A stretch of DNA of 63,852 nt, counting the filler, from Octopus bimaculoides (lineage: Eukaryota): the NCBI RefSeq assembly GCF_001194135.2. It is 5 parts of 5 records of this genome, joined end to end, with 100 filler letters (N's around TTAATTAATTAA, not from the genome) between each part and the next. Parts side by side here need not be neighbours in the genome. Positions count along the whole stretch, not along the records: positions 27,025 to 39,406 come from NC_069002.1; 4 more parts are not named here. The stretch is one strand, 5' to 3'. Of this stretch, positions 27,025 to 39,325 are shown one piece after another. Each line of letters opens with the position of its first letter. The stretch's first letter is position 1. The notes below the pieces were generated by a model, which was not told where the DNA came from, did not search any database, and saw only the letters and a program-made list of their open reading frames with translations. Position numbers and translations under genes: made by a program.

Positions 27025-27064
<40 letters not shown>

Positions 27065-27387
27065 TATGTAAGCATATATATGTGTGTGTGTGTGTGTTCG
27101 TGTGCATGTATTTCTATGCATGCATGTGTATATGAATATATGTATATAGTATATATTAAAGTGTGTGTACATGTGAGTGCTTAGCCATATATGTATGTAG
27201 GTATAAATAAATAAAATTCACAGAAGCCTATGCTAAAATAAATTCACACTTGCCTCTGCATATATATAGATATATACATGAAAACGCATACACAAAAATA
27301 CACACCCACAGGATTTCATACTCTTTTACTCGTTTCAGTTATTTGACTGCGGCCATGCTGGGGCACCGCCTTTAAAATATTATCATG

Positions 27388-27460
27388 TGGAGAATCCGGG
27401 CATCGATCCCGGTACCTCTCGCATGCTAAGCGAGCACTCTACCATCTGAGCTAATTCCCC
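27388..27460 (-). tRNA. trnA-AGC: tRNA-Ala (anticodon AGC), apparently intact
   Basis: GGGGAATTAGCTCAGATGGTAGAGTGCTCGCTTAGCATGCGAGAGGTACCGGGATCGATGCCCGGATTCTCCA, 73 nt. All four stems pair (acceptor GGGGAAT/ATTCTCC with the G3:U70 Ala identity pair, anticodon stem CTCGC/GCGAG, T stem CCGGG/CCCGG). TTTT terminator about 10 nt downstream. Confidence 0.95.
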
Positions 27461-28907
27461 TCACTATATATTTATAAATATATTTATATTTATATAAAGA
27501 CACAGACCTGTAATTTCTTTAAATGAGGGTTTAAGAAATGGTAATTGCTAAACAAAGAAAAAAAATACATTAGCACTGATTTTATTATGCCAATATCGTT
27601 TCTCATTTTAATATGTGACGTATTTAGTTATGTAAACATTCGCCGAAATTCTACCCCCCTCCCCTTCTCTCTCTCACTGTTTATGTATGTTCTCTTTCTT
27701 TTTTTAATTTGCTATAAATTTTGACCGCCCACCTCCTCGGTGGCAAGGATGCGAAGGAAAGCATCTTGTTTTAAACACCATCCTTTAAATCTTAAGGGGG
27801 TCCTGCGGATTTTTATAGTCCCTGATATCGTGATCGTATTTATGCCTACATAACATGCATGTATGTCATTGTTCAGTTTTAATCTCAAGATTTCTTGCCA
27901 ATAGAGAAAGAGCCGGTTTCTAGCCTAGATCCAAGGCTCCTTTAGTGCACATATGCACACACCAACCAATTTTGTTAGCCACAAAACCCTACAGTTGTCA
28001 GCACACAAAAGAAAAGGCTTGCCAATTGTTTAGTTTTCGGTTTGAATTCTGTAAAGATAATTAAATCATTTAGAAGTAAAACACGGATACATACATACAT
28101 ACATGCAAGTATGCATATATACATGGATACATACATACACGCGTGAGAGCAAACACATAAACTACATATATATATATATATATANNNNNNNNNNNNNNNN
28201 NNNNNNNNNNNNNNNNNNNNNNNNNNNNNNNNNNNNNNNNNNNNNNNNNNNNNNNNNNNNNNNNNNNNNNNNNNNNNNNNNNNNNNNNNNNNNNNNNNNN
28301 NNNNNNNNNNNNNNNNNNNNNNNNNNNNNNNNNNNNNNNNNNNNNNNNNNNNNNNNNNNNNNNNNNNNNTATATATATCTACAGGGACACGTGCATACAC
28401 TTCTGCGTATCAACTAAATTTTTACTAATATTTAATAAAATATTTTAAAGGATTCAAATTGTTATGCAATGATCATGGCTGCCCCCCCCCCTGCCTGCCG
28501 TCCCAACAATCAATATATGTACCGATCAACAGGTTTTTTTTAATCGATACCTCTATTAACTTCAATGTATTGATTCCAGTTGAACTTTCTTTGAACCGAT
28601 AATGTTTACCTGTTTTATGACGATTATAATTATTCCGATATATTCGCATACTGCTTCCTTTTCTCTTTATAATTTATTTAGAGAGAGAGAGAGAGATAGA
28701 AAAAAAACTAGATGTTATCTATTACAACGATGCCCGGCCAAAAAAGAACGGTGCCTGTTTAAAACTGGGTCATAGACTAAGGCTACCAACCAGGAACATA
28801 ATCCACTCACAGGATACGTTTCCATACAGATAACGTGAGCCAAGTTTCACATGCAGGAATTGTTGATATTGTTTATCCCTACTTTAGATTTAAACTGGGA
28901 TACTTAA

Positions 28908-29105
28908 CCCTTTTGGCTGCCCAAAGCATTATCATCATTTTTTTCTTAAGTTTATCCGAAGCCTCTGTATTTGATTTCAAACTTTTAGTTAGCTATTTTT
29001 TTTTTTCAAATGCTCTGAGAAATACAAAGTTTCCTTTTCATAAGTTCCTATTTAGTCTAATAATCGAAAAACATTTGGGAAAGTGCATTGTACATGATCC
29101 AAGGG
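28908..29105. mobile_element. Possible piggyBac-type MITE (198 bp)
   Basis: TTAA|CCCTT ... AAGGG|TTAA ends (TTAA at 28904-28907 and 29106-29109). The TIR match is short. Confidence 0.5.
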
Positions 29106-32100
29106 TTAAGACCAAAGTCTTTCACAAATCTCGTCGTATATACGACAGGATTCTGCTCCGCTTCGTTCCAGCACATTCTACACAAAAACAGAAAGCTTAC
29201 TGTACAAGAAAGACACTTTCCGATGATGGCATGCAGTGCGATCGAACGTGGAAACATGTACTTGCAAAGTGAACTAATTTACCATGAAGCTATAATTGCT
29301 TTTATATTAAGTCTAGTGAATCAAACCAAAATTCAATTATATATGTATATATATATATANNNNNNNNNNNNNNNNNNNNNNNNNNNNNNNNNNNNNNNNN
29401 NNNNNNNNNNNNNNNNNNNNNNNNNNNNNNNNNNNNNNNNNNNNNNNNNNNNNNNNNNNNNNNNNNNNNNNNNNNNNNNNNNNNNNNNNNNNNNNNNNNN
29501 NNNNNNNNNNNNNNNNNNNNNNNNNNNNNNNNNNNNNNNNNNNNNNNNNNNNNNNNNNNNNNNNNNNNNNNNNNNNNNNNNNNNNNNNNNNNNNNNNNNN
29601 NNNNNNNNNNNNNNNNNNNNNNNNNNNNNNNNNNNNNNNNNNNNNNNNNNNNNNNNNNNNNNNNNNNNNNNNNNNNNNNNNNNNNNNNNNNNNNNNNNNN
29701 NNNNNNNNNNNNNNNNNNNNNNNNNNNNNNNNNNNNNNNNNNNNNNNNNNNNNNNNNNNNNNNNNNNNNNNNNNNNNNNNNNNNNNNNNNNNNNNNNNNN
29801 NNNNNNNNNNNNNNNNNNNAAAGTAAAAGCCTCTGCGTTTCCGAGACGTGCCTAGAATGTTCCATCACCAATAAATTTCTTTCTGAGATTCAATGAACTG
29901 TATTGACATACTTCCACCATATATAACGGAATAAATTCAATTTTTCATTTTTTTTTTTTTAAATCTCCTTTTAATCTTTCTTTTTGCTTTGTTATATTCA
30001 TAGGACAACAACCATACTTGAATAGCAGTTTGAAAGGATTTTAGTCAAACAAATCGAGCCCTTCCTGTACTTACTTTTCCTTTCAAATCTGTTATTTATT
30101 TTACCGGGACGCAAACAAATCAACATCGGTTGCCATGTCAAGAGGTGAGAGAAATACAGACAGAAATACGCGCGCACACACACGCAAACGCGTATATATA
30201 TAAACATATATTATTGTGTCTGGGGAGACTCATTCTGTTTTAATGCCTTATTAATTAATTAACACACTTATTTACTTATGTATTTTTTCTAAAATTTTCG
30301 TTGCTTCTTGTAACCTTTTAAGTAGTCGTTGACTCCGTCCGTTGTCGGAGCTGTGCTCTTTATCGTTTGTGCGCATGTGTGCGCGTCAATGTGCATGTGT
30401 ACACACATATGTATGTATGTATATATGTGTGTATATATGTGTGTATGTATGGATGTATTTGTGTGTATGTATGCGTGTGTGTGTATGCGTACAAAATCAT
30501 TGGTTGACCTGAGGGTATAATAGAAGACACTTGCCCAAGGTGCCATGGAGTGAGCCTGAGCTCGAAACCACGTCGACTGCAATGCGAGGTCCCTAACCAC
30601 ATAGCCATGACATATCAAGATAAACGTTGCAGGGATGTAAAGAAACCGACAACAAATGTCAAATGGGACAGGTGTGGAGTGTACAAAAACAAACGCAAAG
30701 ACACTCGCACACATGTATACGATGGGCTTCCACACAGTTTCCTTCTAACAATTTCTCTCTCAAGGCAATGGTCGGCCAAGGTACCGCACAGTGCGACTGA
30801 AATCGAAATATATTCAACATTCATAAATAAACATAATATATGAATGCATAAACACAGTGCGTCTATGTGCGTGCATAGAAAGAGAGTAATAGACACACAA
30901 ACGATTCTATAAATATAACGATAGATGCATTGATTTAGATGTCAGACGAAACATACTGCACGGCAGATGCACAGCGGCACAAATATGAAGGTTGTGTATA
31001 GGAATATTTTAACTCGTTTGGCAAGTGTAGAAGACAGTAAATTTCGTTTTATTACTTCATGTGTACGCTCTATACGTACATATAGCAAGCAGGTGATGAC
31101 GTATGTAGTGATGACATGCATATATAACATACGTACATATGCACCGAGATGCAGACATACATGTGCACATATAGATACCTACATACATACATACATACAT
31201 ACACACCTTCGGAGATTCTTTAAATGAATATATGCAAACATTTTGTTGTGTGCATTTACACAACTAATGATGCACAACATCGCACACAGAGACACACACA
31301 CACACACACACTCACACATTGACATACACATACAAAAACGCCTAAGTACTACAAAAAACATATTCCCACAGAACAGGAGCGCTGGTGCACTCATCCACAT
31401 ACACGCATACACCAATTCAACCACATAATTAAAAGCCGCAGGTTACGGTCTTAATTCAAAAAGTCTTGTCATACAAAAGTCTTGCATACATACATACATA
31501 AAATAAAACATGCAAATCTGCACGTATAGATGCATACAAAAATGCCGTGTTGCTGATGGTGTATCTTGCCGTTTGTTATGCTATCGTCTATGTTATGGTC
31601 TATTTTCCCGCATGTTGTGTTTGGTTCGATTCCGCTTGTTATGTTCTTTCTCCTACCTTTGATTTATATATATATATATATNNNNNNNNNNNNNNNNNNN
31701 NNNNNNNNNNNNNNNNNNNNNNNNNNNNNNNNNNNNNNNNNNNNNNNNNNNNNNNNNNNNNNNNNNNNNNNNNNNNNNNNNNNNNNNNATATACGAACAC
31801 AAGACAAGTGATCATTATATGGGATAAGGAGGGAATATACATAATAGTGGGGATAATAAATTTGCAGATTCTTATATATAAATCGTTGCAAACAGTAAAT
31901 ATTAAGTTTTAACAAGTTTTATATCGTTTCTTCTCGTTACTTTCTGGCCTATATAAAACTGGATTAAAAGTGCCGGCTTCATGTAGATTTTAACGAAGGA
32001 AACATGAAATCATGTTCGATGTACTTACTACTGGGTAATTTCAGGACTGTGAGATGGATGGAAGTCAGCGTTGCAAGCTAATGAAACACTCGTTCAAGAT

Positions 32101-32989
32101 ACAGTGCTCTCGTTGCTTACAGCAATAAACTGCACCCACACACTGGGCCCTAATTACAGCTAGGGTAACGACATACGTTAGACAGCGATTGACAAAATAG
32201 AAGAAGGTGTTAGAGATATCTGAAGATATAGTACAAGACTGATTGCTTAGCATTCTTTGAATGGAGAATCTTCTCGGTCAAAGCTGATTTCGCTCTATAC
32301 AGTAACGTCTTCAAACAAACACTATACATACATATTAGTTTATGTATATATTAATATTATCGCAGTTTTAAAAAAACCTTGACAATGTAAATATGTTAAT
32401 AGTTACCATGGGTAGCAAAAATCACATAAAAAAACAAGATATCACACTCGTTTTATAGGTAGAGATACCAAGTTAAAGTCATGCATTTTGAGTAGATATA
32501 GATAATAACAATAAATGGAGCAAAACGCATATAAATAAGGAACTTTTACTTATATGCGTTTTGCTCCATTTATCGTTATTATTCATATATATATATATCT
32601 ATCTTTTTTATCTATATATATATGTAAATGTTGAACAAGGAGAATGACCAATTAATACCGCATTGGTGGATAAAGTTTCTTTATTTGTGTATTAAGGTTA
32701 CCATTGGGTTCATGTTAAGAAAAATATCTTAATATCTTAATAATTTCTCAAGCTGATCACATGGAGGAATGAGGTTTGTCTCCATATATACACACACGCA
32801 TACATAANNNNNNNNNNNNNNNNNNNNNNNNNNNNNNNNNNNNNNNNNNNNNATATATATATATATCTATCTTTTTTATCTATATATATATGTATATATA
32901 TATGAGGTGTGGAGCATCACAGCCATGAGCTGAGAAGGATTCTTTGAAGTTTGAATAAGTGTAACAAAAGCAATAATAGACAAGGAAAA

Positions 32990-33362
32990 GTGAAGTTTCG
33001 TACTAATTGATACATAATGTCTGGTTTGATTCCAGGATCGTAAAGAAAGAAGACGAAAAGCAAAAAAATAATAATCCCTGAAAATTCGAAATTGCAAGTA
33101 TTTGGAATATGAAAACTGTAAAGGTTGGGCCTATAAGAATTGATGCATTTGGAACTTTAAGCAAAGATATAAAGAAATGGTTGAAAGAAATTGGAACTTT
33201 TGCAGAAAGTTTGCCTCTTACGGACAGGAAAGATTATCAGGCGGGTTTTAAGCACATGAAAGACTACTGAAAGCTGGTGGATACCTAAGGTTACAGGTAG
33301 TAATTTGCTGCCCACATAAATTCCACAAGGAATAAAACCGAACCTGAGTCAAATCAATAATC
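32990..33362 (+). mobile_element. R4/Dong-like (RLE) non-LTR element 3' end, copy A
   Basis: RIVKKEDEK...LKIEIA.IWNMKTVKV.PI.I.AFGTLSKDIKKWLKEIG...QKVCLLRTGKIIRRVLST* (reconstructed across frameshifts) resembles the RLE C-terminus; followed by a 3'UTR and (TAA)n. Confidence 0.75.
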
Positions 33363-33369
33363 AATAATC

Positions 33370-33425
<56 letters not shown>

Positions 33426-33630
33426 TTTTAATTTTTGGCTCAAGGCCAACAGGGGGAGGGGTTAAGTCGATTACATCGACCCCAGTATTCAGCTGGTACT
33501 TATTTTATCGACCTCGAGCGGATGAAAGGCAAAGTAAACCTCTGCGGAATTTGAACTGAGAAGGTGAAGACGGACGAAATGTCGCTAAGCATTTTGCCCG
33601 GTGTGCTAACGATTTTACCAGCTCGCCGCC

Positions 33631-33632
<2 letters not shown>
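33426..33632 (-). mobile_element. SINE family 1 copy inside (TAA)n in cephalotocin intron 1
   Basis: Same family as 8181-8371; (TAA)n on both flanks. Confidence 0.85.
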
Positions 33633-33700
<68 letters not shown>

Positions 33701-34087
33701 TAGGGCTACTAAAAGACGAACTTGCAAGAATGTGGGCAATGTAGAGGGTAGTTTTTATCCCGATATTTGTATAGGAACACGGAGCACTAACAGCCAGGTT
33801 CGAAAAATGTATCGGAGAAATAGGAATTGCGACGAGGCTGGAGCAGCCCCACCACTTCCCAAAAAACCGCTCTGTTGGGAATAGCTAGGATTTTGAGATT
33901 GGTTCTTAGGTGTTAACTGATTTCCATGATAAGTTAACATTCAAAGTACCAAATCTTATAATTTGCAGAAAGAGACCCTGTGATACCTCTGACTACAGGT
34001 TGCTATCCGCGCTCACAAAATCAACCAGAGCACGTAAGGCCGGCCCGGTACTAAGGCAGCTGAAATAAAGTTATAATGAAAGCAAAC
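33701..34087 (+). mobile_element. R4/Dong-like element 3' end, copy B
   Basis: LLKDELARMWAM...PIF.GT.GALTARFEKCIGEIGIATRLEQ...QKTALLGIARILRLVLRC* (across frameshifts); flanked by (TAA)n on both sides. Confidence 0.75.
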
Positions 34088-34110
34088 CATAAATAATAAT
34101 AATAATAATG

Positions 34111-34190
<80 letters not shown>

Positions 34191-34192
<2 letters not shown>

Positions 34193-34327
34193 TAAACACT
34201 ATGTGCAAATCTAAATATATGGAACCCTAGGCATAACACCTACATGAACTTCTAACTTGTTGTCTCTTGAGGTCTCTGAGTGAGACTTGGATCCAACTTG
34301 TACAAATGCAAAACAAAAGTCAAACAA

Positions 34328-34328
<1 letters not shown>
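34191..34328 (+). mobile_element. Probable 3'UTR fragment of a third (TAA)n-anchored retroelement
   Basis: 138-bp unique segment embedded between two (TAA)n tracts like copies A and B. Family assignment is inference only. Confidence 0.45.
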
Positions 34329-34376
<48 letters not shown>

Positions 34377-34383
34377 CACTTAC

Positions 34384-34539
34384 CTTTTGATTTGATCCCT
34401 GTTCTGACATGGGTGTCGCTCGTTTACCGCCAATGGGACAGTTTCGGAAATAGCAACCATCTGTAGTGGCAATGAAGAAACTGCATACTGTGAACAACAC
34501 GAACAAAAGTTGGACGATGGCGAAACAATTTTGAGACAT
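34384..34539 (-). CDS. CT: Cephalotocin (oxytocin/vasopressin-family) precursor, coding exon 1: signal peptide + nonapeptide CYFRNCPIG + GKR + linker (52 aa)
   Basis: Translation MSQNCFAIVQLLFVLFTVCSFFIATTDG-CYFRNCPIG-GKR-ATPMSEQGSNQK. Cys1-Cys6 ring, Pro7, Gly9 and the GKR amidation/cleavage site are the OT/VP family hallmark; CYFRNCPIG is the known cephalotocin sequence (mature peptide 34455-34429). ATG at 34539 in AAAATG context; exon ends AAG|GTAAGT (phase 0). Confidence 0.97.
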
Positions 34540-34942
34540 TTTCACAGTTGTTGTGTATAAATTTTTGAGATATAGATATAGAAATAAATGTATATTTATA
34601 ATTACAAATATGTATTATTGCTGCGTATGATCAAGACAACTTTATATATATGTATATAAATATATATAAAGATATATGCTGTATACTATGCAAATATATA
34701 AATAAATCTCTTGTTTAATTCTTGTGTAGCTGTTATTTCTTGTTGTATTATCTAGATATATTTTTTCTTTGCTTGTTCTCTTAACCACTTCTTCCGACTG
34801 ACTTCGGCAGAATATAAAGGCTAACTAGTCTTGTAAGACAATGTCACTGCAGTTTCATTACAAGCGCCTGTTTGTCTTTTTCTAAACACTTGCTTGTTTG
34901 TATATTTTTTAACAGCTGATATTATTTATTTGTATGTGTATG

Positions 34943-35957
34943 TGTGTGTGTGTGTGTGTAATGTGTATATGTATGTGTGCGCGCGTGCGTATGATTTATT
35001 ACTATTATTTTTTTTTTATGCAAAGGGGCCGTAACTTACTAAATAAATTCTTCGTTAATTAAATATTTCAGTCTGTGGGCTGGGCAGTTAGTTATACGTA
35101 GGTTATAAGTCTGACAAGATAATGTAGTTAACCTGGTGGCAGTGGTAGTGGTGGTAGTGGTGATAGTGGCGGTGGTGTTGGTGCTNNNNNNNNNNNNNNN
35201 NNNNNNNNNNNNNNNNNNNNNNNNNNNNNNNNNNNNNNNNNNNNNNNNNNNNNNNNNNNNNNNNNNNNNNNNNNNNNNNNNNNNNNNNNNNNNNNNNNNN
35301 NNNNNNNNNNNNNNNNNNNNNNNNNNNNNNNNNNNNNNNNNNNNNNNNNNNNNNNNNNNNNNNNNNNNNNNNNNNNNNNNNNNNNNNNNNNNNNNNNNNN
35401 NNNNNNNNNNNNNNNNNNNNNNNNNNNNNNNNNNNNNNNNNNNNNNNNNNNNNNNNNNNNNNNNNNNNNNNNNNNNNNNNNNNNNNNNNNNNNNNNNNNN
35501 NNNNNNNNNNNNNNNNNNNNNNNNNNNNNNNNNNNNNNNNNNNNNNNNNNNNNNNNNNNNNNNNNNNNNNNNNNNNNNNNNNNNNNNNNNNNNNNNNNNN
35601 NNNNNNNNNNNNNNNNNNNNNNNNNNNNNNNNNNNNNNNNNNNNNNNNNNNNNNNNNNNNNNNNNNNNNNNNNNNNNNNNNNNNNNNNNNNNNNNNNNNN
35701 NNNNNNNNNNNNNNNNNNNNNNNNNNNNNNNNNNNNNNNNNNNNTGTGTGTGTGTGTGTGTAATGTGTATATGTATGTGTGCGCGCGTGCGTATGATTTA
35801 TTACTATTATTTTTTTTTTATGCAAAGGGGCCGTAACTTACTAAATAAATTCTTCGTTAATTAAATATTTCAGTCTGTGGGCTGGGCAGTTAGTTATACG
35901 TAGGTTATAAGTCTGACAAGATAATGTAGTTAACCTGGTGGCAGTGGTAGTGGTGGT
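34943..35957 (+). repeat. Identical 213-bp direct repeat (34943-35155 / 35745-35957) flanking an N gap
   Basis: Exact identity including the 10-T run; offset 802. Confidence 0.92.
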
Positions 35958-38770: not shown

Positions 38771-39258
38771 TACAAACACACACAGAAAACTTTACAAAGC
38801 TCAATGACAAATGTATGAAATCTAATCCGAAAGCCAGAGTCAGATCAATTTGTCACTCTGTTGTGTCACAACAACAACAACAACAACAACAACGATAAAT
38901 ATAAAGGTAGATATCAAATTATGATAACGATGATGACGATGATGATGACAACGACGACGTCGATGAAGATTAATAATAACAACCATGATGGTGATGATGA
39001 TAATAATAATAACAACAAATAATAATAATAATAATTATTATTATTATTATCATTATTACTATTATAGGAACATGGCCTGAAATTTTGGCGGGTGGGGGCA
39101 CATCGACCCCAATACTTGATTGATATTTAATTTCATGACCCCGAAAGGATGAAAGGCAAAGTCAACCACGGTGGAATTTGAACTGAGAACGTAAAGACGG
39201 ACGAAATGGTGGTAAGCTTTTCGTTCGACGTGCTAATGATTCTGCCAGCACAATAATA

Positions 39259-39325
<67 letters not shown>

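What the first reader, a model, noticed from the sequence alone, without database searches (positions are those of the whole stretch)
34375..34539. Cephalotocin gene has a canonical intron 1, at odds with the intronless octopus gene structure I recall being reported
Seen: the precursor frame runs ...GSNQK then AAG|GTAAGTGC, a consensus phase-0 donor, and is followed by (TTA)n and retroelement debris instead of neurophysin. Established: vertebrate AVP/OXT and snail conopressin genes have intron 1 at this position, between the linker and the first neurophysin Cys. Recollection to verify: Octopus vulgaris cephalotocin and octopressin genes were described as single-exon in the coding region. Inference: either the ancestral intron is retained in this species and was lost or retro-replaced in O. 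vulgaris, or the earlier description needs revision.
Basis: partly seen in the sequence, partly recalled or inferred. Interest (0 to 1): 0.75.

Follow-up and report, generated by a model that had tools for sequence, protein, structure and literature searches.

The report
Octopus cephalotocin gene: exon 1 and intron
This is the first exon of the octopus cephalotocin (oxytocin/vasopressin-type) hormone gene, and it ends at a textbook splice site exactly where all related genes have their first intron, so the published claim that the octopus gene is intronless probably needs correcting.

Summary
On the minus strand, ATG 34539 opens a 52-codon frame: signal peptide, CYFRNCPIG, GKR, then ATPMSEQGSNQK. 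It ends at AAG|GTAAGT (34384|34383), phase 0. That octamer occurs only once in the window. Reading on gives poly-Leu from (TTA)16 and a stop. No neurophysin coding sequence lies in the 7.36 kb downstream or anywhere else in the piece.

The donor sits where Lymnaea and other molluscs have intron 1, just before the first neurophysin Cys. Lymnaea's intron 1 is 41.7 kb, so an intron longer than 7 kb is ordinary.

The only database relative is O. vulgaris "cephalotocin-del" (51/52 identical). It diverges exactly at this junction. Its odd tail, read in the frame expected if exon 2 is skipped, fits the invariant S/A-C-x5-C that starts molluscan exon 3 (p about 0.01).

The "single exon" paper (Kanda et al. 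2003) exists, and a 2020 review still repeats its claim. No searchable paper corrects it.

Best reading: canonical exon 1 and intron 1 of a three-exon gene, and the 2003 description probably needs revision. Exons 2 and 3, the acceptor, transcripts and the species could not be examined. This is a correction of the record, not a new kind of biology.

The parts
34384..34539 (-). Coding part of exon 1 of the cephalotocin prepropeptide gene (52 codons, ATG at 34539)
   Evidence: Read from the sequence and ORF list. 51/52 identical to O. vulgaris cephalotocin-del BAC82437/Q76DM9, E 1e-27. Matches the molluscan precursor profile at E 3e-7.
34456..34539 (-). Signal peptide, residues 1-28 (MSQNCFAIVQLLFVLFTVCSFFIATTDG)
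   Evidence: A hydrophobic N-terminus directly before the nonapeptide, as in all aligned molluscan precursors. The cleavage site is inferred and was not run through a predictor.
34429..34455 (-). Cephalotocin nonapeptide CYFRNCPIG
   Evidence: Pattern hit at 34455. Identical to the published O. vulgaris cephalotocin peptide (PMC7181382).
34420..34428 (-). GKR amidation and dibasic cleavage signal
   Evidence: Read from the sequence. G36, K37 and R38 are nearly invariant and G35 is invariant in alignment A1.
34384..34419 (-). Linker ATPMSEQGSNQK, the N-terminal residues of the neurophysin part encoded by exon 1
   Evidence: 12 residues, against 11 in Lymnaea (SLDTGMVTSRE). In both, these are the last exon-1 residues before the first neurophysin Cys.
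34378..34383 (-). Splice donor GTAAGT of intron 1 (AAG|GTAAGT, phase 0)
   Evidence: The only AGGTAAGT in the window. Same position and phase as the donors in Lymnaea L001, L002 and L003. The published cephalotocin-del diverges at this point.
27025..34383 (-). Visible part of intron 1: at least 7,359 bp to the edge of the piece, of which 797 bp are N
   Evidence: No neurophysin coding sequence in any frame by regex, tblastn, Cys-density scan or profile HMM. The published Ov-CT qPCR primers are absent.
34328..34375 (-). (TTA)16 microsatellite starting 9 nt into the intron
   Evidence: Tandem Repeats Finder: period 3, 16 copies, 100% match.
34593..34600 (-). TATAAATA, a candidate TATA box 54-61 nt upstream of the ATG (weak, in an AT-rich context)
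   Evidence: Read from the sequence only. Not tested.

Best explanation
Positions 34539-34384 on the minus strand are the coding part of exon 1 of the cephalotocin gene, an oxytocin/vasopressin-type neuropeptide gene. Exon 1 encodes the signal peptide, the nonapeptide CYFRNCPIG, the GKR amidation and cleavage signal, and a 12-residue linker.

The exon ends at a consensus phase-0 donor, AAG|GTAAGT. This opens the ancestral intron 1 found in bilaterian genes of this family. In this piece the intron runs for at least 7.36 kb to the edge and is filled with microsatellites, SINE-like elements and a tRNA-Ala sequence.

The two neurophysin exons must lie beyond the edge. By homology, exon 2 should begin at the first Cys (CMSCGP...).

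So the gene has the canonical three-exon structure. The published single-exon structure most probably came from a spliced template, either cDNA carry-over or a processed copy, and not from the native locus.

Shown: exon 1, the donor, the absence of neurophysin over 7.36 kb, and the homologous position in other molluscs. Inferred: actual splicing, exons 2 and 3, and the reason for the 2003 result.
For: 1. The open frame, peptide and donor are as described. AGGTAAGT is unique in the window.

2. Reading through gives poly-Leu and a stop. A profile HMM of 21 precursors finds only exon 1 in the six-frame translation of the piece, at E 3e-7. The next best hit has E 0.18. Regex and tblastn searches are also negative.

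3. O. vulgaris CT mRNA contains TGTATGTCTTGCGGACCAAA, which encodes CMSCGP (qPCR primer in PMC5736919). This sequence is absent from the piece.

4. The Lymnaea gene has its exon-1 end and donor at the same place, a phase-0 intron 1 of 41,709 bp, an exon 2 starting at CMKCGP, and a phase-1 intron 2.

5. Two other molluscan genomic contigs show the same donor position. One has no exon 2 within 6.6 kb downstream.

6. Intron 1 is 40 kb in Aplysia (PMC10067623). Phase-0 and phase-1 introns are conserved in deuterostomes (PMC10532012).

7. O. vulgaris cephalotocin-del is 51/52 identical up to GSNQK and diverges exactly there.

8. I back-translated the cephalotocin-del tail and shifted it into the frame expected when exon 1 (phase-0 end) is joined to an exon that follows a phase-1 intron. 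It then allows x-[APST]-C-x5-C with R forced at position 8. This is in register with the invariant S/A-C-x5-C of molluscan exon 3. About 1% of shuffled tails do this.
Against: - Kanda et al. 2003 reported no intron in the coding region of the O. vulgaris gene (cited in PMC7181382). I could not read that paper.
- Exon 2, exon 3 and the acceptor are not in the piece.
- 797 bp of the downstream sequence are N. A 460-bp gap at 29360-29819 could in principle hide an exon of about 208 bp.
- No transcript or read data were reachable.
- The full-length cephalotocin precursor (Q76DN0) could not be retrieved, so the K|C junction rests on homology and on a primer sequence.
- The species of the window is unknown.
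- The window differs from the published signal peptide at one residue (F21 versus L21).
Confidence: 0.85

Rival explanations
1. Two copies exist. This locus is the ancestral intron-containing gene, active or decaying. The gene cloned in 2003 is a separate intronless retrogene elsewhere in the genome and may be the main expressed copy. Both descriptions would then be right.
For: The published single-exon structure covers both cephalotocin and octopressin (PMC7181382). Only exon 1 can be seen here. There is one residue of difference from the published signal peptide.
Against: Cephalotocin-del from the same species breaks exactly at the intron-1 position, and its tail fits exon 3 read out of frame. 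That message came from an intron-containing gene. Exon 1 here is intact, with a start codon, a processing site and a perfect donor. Two paralogous genes both being replaced by retrogenes is unparsimonious (inference).
Confidence: 0.08
2. There is a true species difference. The window's species keeps the ancestral intron, and the Japanese 'O. vulgaris' studied in 2003 lost it.
For: The species of the window is unknown. F21 versus L21 shows it is not the same allele or population as the published sequence.
Against: At 51/52 identity the two are very close relatives. Precise loss of both introns in such a short time, and in octopressin too, is unlikely (inference). Cephalotocin-del from the 2003 animals carries the signature of both intron positions.
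Confidence: 0.04
3. This is an orphan exon-1 fragment or an assembly chimera. The neurophysin part was lost from this locus or was misjoined by the assembler, so no functional intron is present.
For: The piece is gap-rich, with five N runs, and repeat-rich. Nothing downstream could be checked.
Against: A misjoin or a random breakpoint would not create AAG|GTAAGT at the exact phase-0 codon boundary used by Lymnaea and other molluscs. Exon 1 has no disabling change. Other molluscan contigs also show exon 1 alone with many kb of downstream sequence lacking exon 2.
Confidence: 0.03

Closest known systems
Lymnaea stagnalis conopressin/neurophysin gene (and the Aplysia lys-conopressin/vasotocin gene)
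   Same: The exon-1 content is the same: signal peptide, nonapeptide, GKR and a linker of 11-12 residues. The phase-0 GT donor lies immediately before the first neurophysin Cys. Intron 1 is very long: 41.7 kb in Lymnaea and 40 kb in Aplysia (PMC10067623).
   Different: The peptide is CYFRNCPIG, not CFIRNCPKG. Only exon 1 and at least 7.36 kb of the intron are visible here, and the neurophysin exons were not seen.
Vertebrate AVP/OXT genes and deuterostome oxytocin/vasopressin-type genes
   Same: They have three coding exons, a phase-0 intron 1 after the first few neurophysin residues, and a phase-1 intron 2 (PMC10532012).
   Different: Vertebrate introns are short. Here the intron is many kb long and full of repeats.
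Published O. vulgaris cephalotocin gene, 'single exon' (Kanda et al. 2003, BBRC 309:743)
   Same: The nonapeptide is the same, and 51/52 residues match over the signal peptide, peptide and linker.
   Different: The published coding region is contiguous. Here the coding sequence stops at a splice donor, and no neurophysin follows for 7.36 kb.
O. vulgaris cephalotocin-del (BAC82437 / Q76DM9)
   Same: Identical up to GSNQK apart from one residue. Its breakpoint coincides with the donor found here.
   Different: It continues with a 34-residue tail that is not neurophysin and is not encoded in this piece. The tail is best explained as exon 3 read out of frame after exon 2 is skipped (inference).

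Membership tests
Oxytocin/vasopressin-type (neurohypophysial) prepropeptide gene | A signal peptide followed directly by a C-x4-C-P-x-G nonapeptide | tested here: met
   CYFRNCPIG follows a 28-residue hydrophobic leader. Aligns to the molluscan precursor profile at E 3e-7.
Oxytocin/vasopressin-type (neurohypophysial) prepropeptide gene | A GKR amidation and dibasic processing signal after the nonapeptide | tested here: met
   GGKR is read from the sequence. These positions are invariant or nearly invariant in A1.
Oxytocin/vasopressin-type (neurohypophysial) prepropeptide gene | A C-terminal neurophysin domain (Pfam Hormone_5 PF00184, 14 Cys) | not testable with these tools
   The domain is absent from the whole piece and is expected on exons beyond the edge at 27025. 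The Pfam scan of the 52 residues gives no family, whereas Lymnaea residues 48-127 hit PF00184. The full-length octopus precursor could not be retrieved.
Oxytocin/vasopressin-type (neurohypophysial) prepropeptide gene | A phase-0 intron 1 between the linker and the first neurophysin Cys | tested here: met
   The donor AAG|GTAAGT is at the homologous codon boundary. Compare Lymnaea, L002 and L003. Only the donor side was seen. The acceptor and the act of splicing were not.
Oxytocin/vasopressin-type (neurohypophysial) prepropeptide gene | A phase-1 intron 2 within the C-terminal part of neurophysin | tested here: inconclusive
   It is not in the piece. Indirect support: the cephalotocin-del tail fits exon 3 shifted by the frame that a phase-0 to phase-1 join predicts, p about 0.01.
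Intronless (single-exon) octopus cephalotocin gene as published in 2003 | The coding region from the ATG through neurophysin is contiguous in genomic DNA | tested here: not met
   The frame leaves coding sequence at 34383. Reading on gives poly-Leu and a stop, and there is no neurophysin in 7.36 kb.
Processed retrocopy or pseudogene | Introns absent, with a poly(A) remnant and target-site duplications around a cDNA-like insert | tested here: not met
   The locus has a splice donor and no downstream cDNA-like continuation. It is not a retrocopy.

The most novel reading that the evidence does not exclude
The common octopus lineage carries both the ancestral split cephalotocin gene seen here and an expressed intronless retrogene, the one cloned in 2003. 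This would be a recent retroduplication of a neurohormone gene. The same may hold for octopressin.
Probability: 0.08. Interest if true: 0.6.

Novelty: new member of a known kind. Interest (0 to 1): 0.4.

Why it matters
The 'single-exon' octopus oxytocin/vasopressin genes are still cited as the one exception to an otherwise universal three-exon structure (2020 review, PMC7181382). If cephalotocin has the canonical intron 1, and by inference intron 2, that exception disappears. The intron positions can then serve as orthology markers across Bilateria without a caveat.

Cephalotocin-del would become an ordinary exon-skipping isoform. It would also be a reminder that early PCR-based gene structures of small neuropeptide genes with very long introns can be wrong. 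This is a useful correction for people who annotate cephalopod neuropeptide genes, but it is not new biology.

Tried and rejected
**Retrieving the full-length cephalotocin precursor**
- A word-indexed search and an exhaustive phmmer search with the 52 residues returned only cephalotocin-del.
- A search with Lymnaea conopressin and a profile of 21 precursors returned many molluscs but no cephalopod.
- So I had no octopus neurophysin sequence to use as a probe.

**Finding genomic or transcript contigs that carry this exon**
- Exact look-ups of the read-through ORF (ATG and GTG starts), of cephalotocin-del and of two other window ORFs found nothing.
- A degenerate DNA scan for CYFRNCPIGGKR in metagenome contigs gave 0 hits.

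**Literature**
- No paper in the library revisits the octopus gene structure.
- The supplements of two molluscan neuropeptide surveys do not hold the sequence.
- Kanda 2005 was not held, and the 2003 paper is not in the library.

**A possible hidden neurophysin exon**
- The best candidate is 32068-32277(-), 'RAQCVGAVYCCKQREHCIL', at E 0.15-0.18.
- It lacks the C-x2-C-G-P start, so I rejected it as chance.

**Other**
I replaced it with a local HMM.
- An 'exitron' origin of cephalotocin-del from an intronless gene was considered. It would need cryptic sites at both conserved intron positions, so I judged it unlikely.

Full report
**What is in the sequence**

The feature lies on the minus strand. 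An ATG at 34539-34537 opens a frame of 52 codons:
- MSQNCFAIVQLLFVLFTVCSFFIATTDG, a signal peptide
- CYFRNCPIG, the cephalotocin nonapeptide
- GKR, the amidation and cleavage signal
- ATPMSEQGSNQK, a linker

The last codon, AAG, is at 34386-34384. It is followed by GTAAGTGC and then (TTA)16 at 34375-34328. The boundary falls between codons, so the donor is phase 0.

Reading through gives VSA, a run of Leu from the microsatellite, and a stop at 34254-34252. The octamer AGGTAAGT occurs once on both strands of the whole window, at this spot. About 0.22 occurrences are expected anywhere.

**Is the rest of the precursor nearby?**

No. The minus-strand sequence downstream of the donor runs 7,359 bp to the edge of the piece at 27025. 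Four N runs make up 797 bp of it. I searched all six frames of the whole piece in several ways:
- patterns for the neurophysin Cys framework
- a Cys-density scan
- a profile HMM built from 21 molluscan, brachiopod and insect precursors

Only exon 1 is found, at E 3e-7. The next best segment is 32068-32277(-), at E 0.18. It lacks the C-x2-C-G-P start and is not significant.

The same HMM recovers all three exons of the Lymnaea gene as a positive control. Published qPCR primers for O. vulgaris cephalotocin include TGTATGTCTTGCGGACCAAA, which encodes C-M-S-C-G-P (PMC5736919). They are absent from the piece even when four mismatches are allowed.

One caveat remains. The 460-bp N run at 29360-29819 could in principle hide an exon of about 208 bp. 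It is flanked by microsatellite sequence, which makes that unlikely.

**Is this the conserved intron position?**

I tested this directly. The Lymnaea conopressin gene (L001) spans 43 kb for a 155-residue product:
- Exon 1 ends ...TSRE|GTAAAT.
- Intron 1 is 41,709 bp and phase 0.
- Exon 2 begins cag|TGC ATG AAG TGT GGG CCA, which is CMKCGP.
- Intron 2 is phase 1 (...TCA G|gt ... ag|AA TCA TGT).

Genomic contigs of two other molluscs turned up as read-through ORFs. Their donors are at the same residue boundary...PKRE|GTAAGA in L003 and ...ATHE|GTAAGC in L002. L003 has no exon 2 within 6.6 kb downstream.

The literature agrees. Aplysia has a 40-kb intron 1 (PMC10067623). Deuterostome genes have conserved phase-0 and phase-1 introns (PMC10532012).

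The window therefore shows what exon 1 of a molluscan oxytocin/vasopressin-type gene looks like on a 12-kb piece. An intron longer than 7 kb is ordinary. For comparison, another O. vulgaris neuropeptide gene has a 24-kb intron (bioRxiv 10.64898/2026.02.18.706622).

**The literature claim**

[quoted passage not shown] I found no paper in the searchable library that revisits this. The 2003 paper itself is not held, so I could not check its methods.

**An independent clue from the 2003 animals**

The only relative of the 52 residues in two very large protein collections is 'cephalotocin-del' of O. vulgaris (BAC82437 / Q76DM9, 86 residues). It is 51/52 identical, with L21 in place of F21. It departs from the expected precursor exactly after GSNQK, at the donor found here. 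It then continues with 34 residues that do not look like neurophysin and are not encoded in this piece.

If exon 2 were skipped, a phase-0 exon-1 end would be joined to an exon that follows a phase-1 intron. Exon 3 would then be read out of frame. I back-translated the tail degenerately and shifted it into the predicted true frame. The allowed residues are [APST]-[APST]-[CGRS]-x-[APST]-[AT]-[DHNY]-[R or stop]-[CR]... This is compatible, without any gap, with the invariant S/A-C-x5-C that opens exon 3 in all 21 aligned precursors (for example ESCAVNDRC in Lymnaea). About 1% of shuffled or random tails allow Cys at both positions.

This test works on protein letters only, so it is supportive and not decisive. 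Even so, both ends of the 'deletion' coincide with the two conserved intron positions. That is what an exon-2-skipped mRNA from a three-exon gene would look like, and it is hard to get from a truly intronless gene.

I could not check whether that database entry came from cDNA or from genomic PCR. Its accession is adjacent to that of cephalotocin, Q76DN0, which suggests the same submission.

**Best explanation and rivals**

The best explanation, at about 0.85 confidence, is that 34539-34384(-) is exon 1 of a canonical three-exon cephalotocin gene. The donor at 34383 opens the ancestral phase-0 intron 1, and the neurophysin exons lie beyond 27025.

The cephalotocin-del evidence favours revising the earlier description, for example because of cDNA carry-over in genomic PCR, over lineage-specific intron loss.

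The rivals are a second intronless retrogene elsewhere (0.08), a true species difference (0.04), and an orphan fragment or misassembly (0.03). The last is unlikely because a breakpoint would not create a consensus donor at the homologous codon boundary.

**What could not be done**

- No octopus genome or transcriptome was reachable.
- Exact-sequence look-ups and a degenerate DNA scan found nothing.
- The full-length cephalotocin precursor was not retrievable.
- The acceptor, exons 2 and 3, actual splicing, the species of the window and the existence of other copies therefore remain untested.

**Novelty and interest**

The intron is the ancestral, expected feature. What is new is that the octopus gene has it, against a statement still repeated in reviews. 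Current genome annotations may already model it, but I could not check that.

This is a worthwhile correction for neuropeptide evolution and cephalopod annotation, not a new kind of system. I score interest at 0.4.

Noticed in passing
window 27387-27460 (-): A tRNA-Ala (anticodon AGC) lies inside the putative intron 1, on the same strand as the cephalotocin gene. It scores 55 bits against Rfam tRNA, and ARAGORN agrees. It could be a nested tRNA gene or the head of a tRNA-derived repeat.
   Followed up: partly
window 33425-33702 (+) and 39060-39325 (+): Two copies of a SINE-like element of about 200 bp, about 80% identical. Each ends in a long (AAT)n tail. One lies in the intron and one upstream of the gene. 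Further (AAT)n arrays lie at 33356-33423, 34092-34195 and 34328-34375, and the last of these abuts the splice donor.
   Followed up: partly
window 32068-32277 (-): The open segment contains RAQCVGAVYCCKQREHCIL. It weakly resembles the QCVGPxICCGxxxGC core of neurophysin exon 2 (E 0.15-0.18 in a local HMM search, also the top tblastn hit with bovine neurophysin). It is not significant and lacks the C-x2-C-G-P start. It is probably chance, though a decayed exon relic is not excluded.
   Followed up: partly
window 28185-28369, 29360-29819, 31682-31788, 32808-32852, 35186-35744: Five N runs of irregular length, mostly flanked by TA/TG-type microsatellites. This suggests a short-read scaffolded assembly with estimated gap sizes. 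It limits what can be excluded about hidden exons.
   Followed up: no
L001 44134-44400 (+) (Lymnaea stagnalis contig CAXITT010000257.1): Just downstream of exon 2 of the Lymnaea conopressin gene there is a second, degenerate copy of the end of exon 2: RGEAWWSRDAGNCVADGICWDS, with Cys replaced by Trp. It looks like a small tandem duplication relic inside intron 2.
   Followed up: no
window 34593-34600 (-): TATAAATA lies 54-61 nt upstream of the ATG in a very AT-rich stretch. It is a possible core promoter. A cag|CAATAA motif at 34621|34620 could instead be an acceptor for a 5'-UTR intron. Neither was tested.
   Followed up: no
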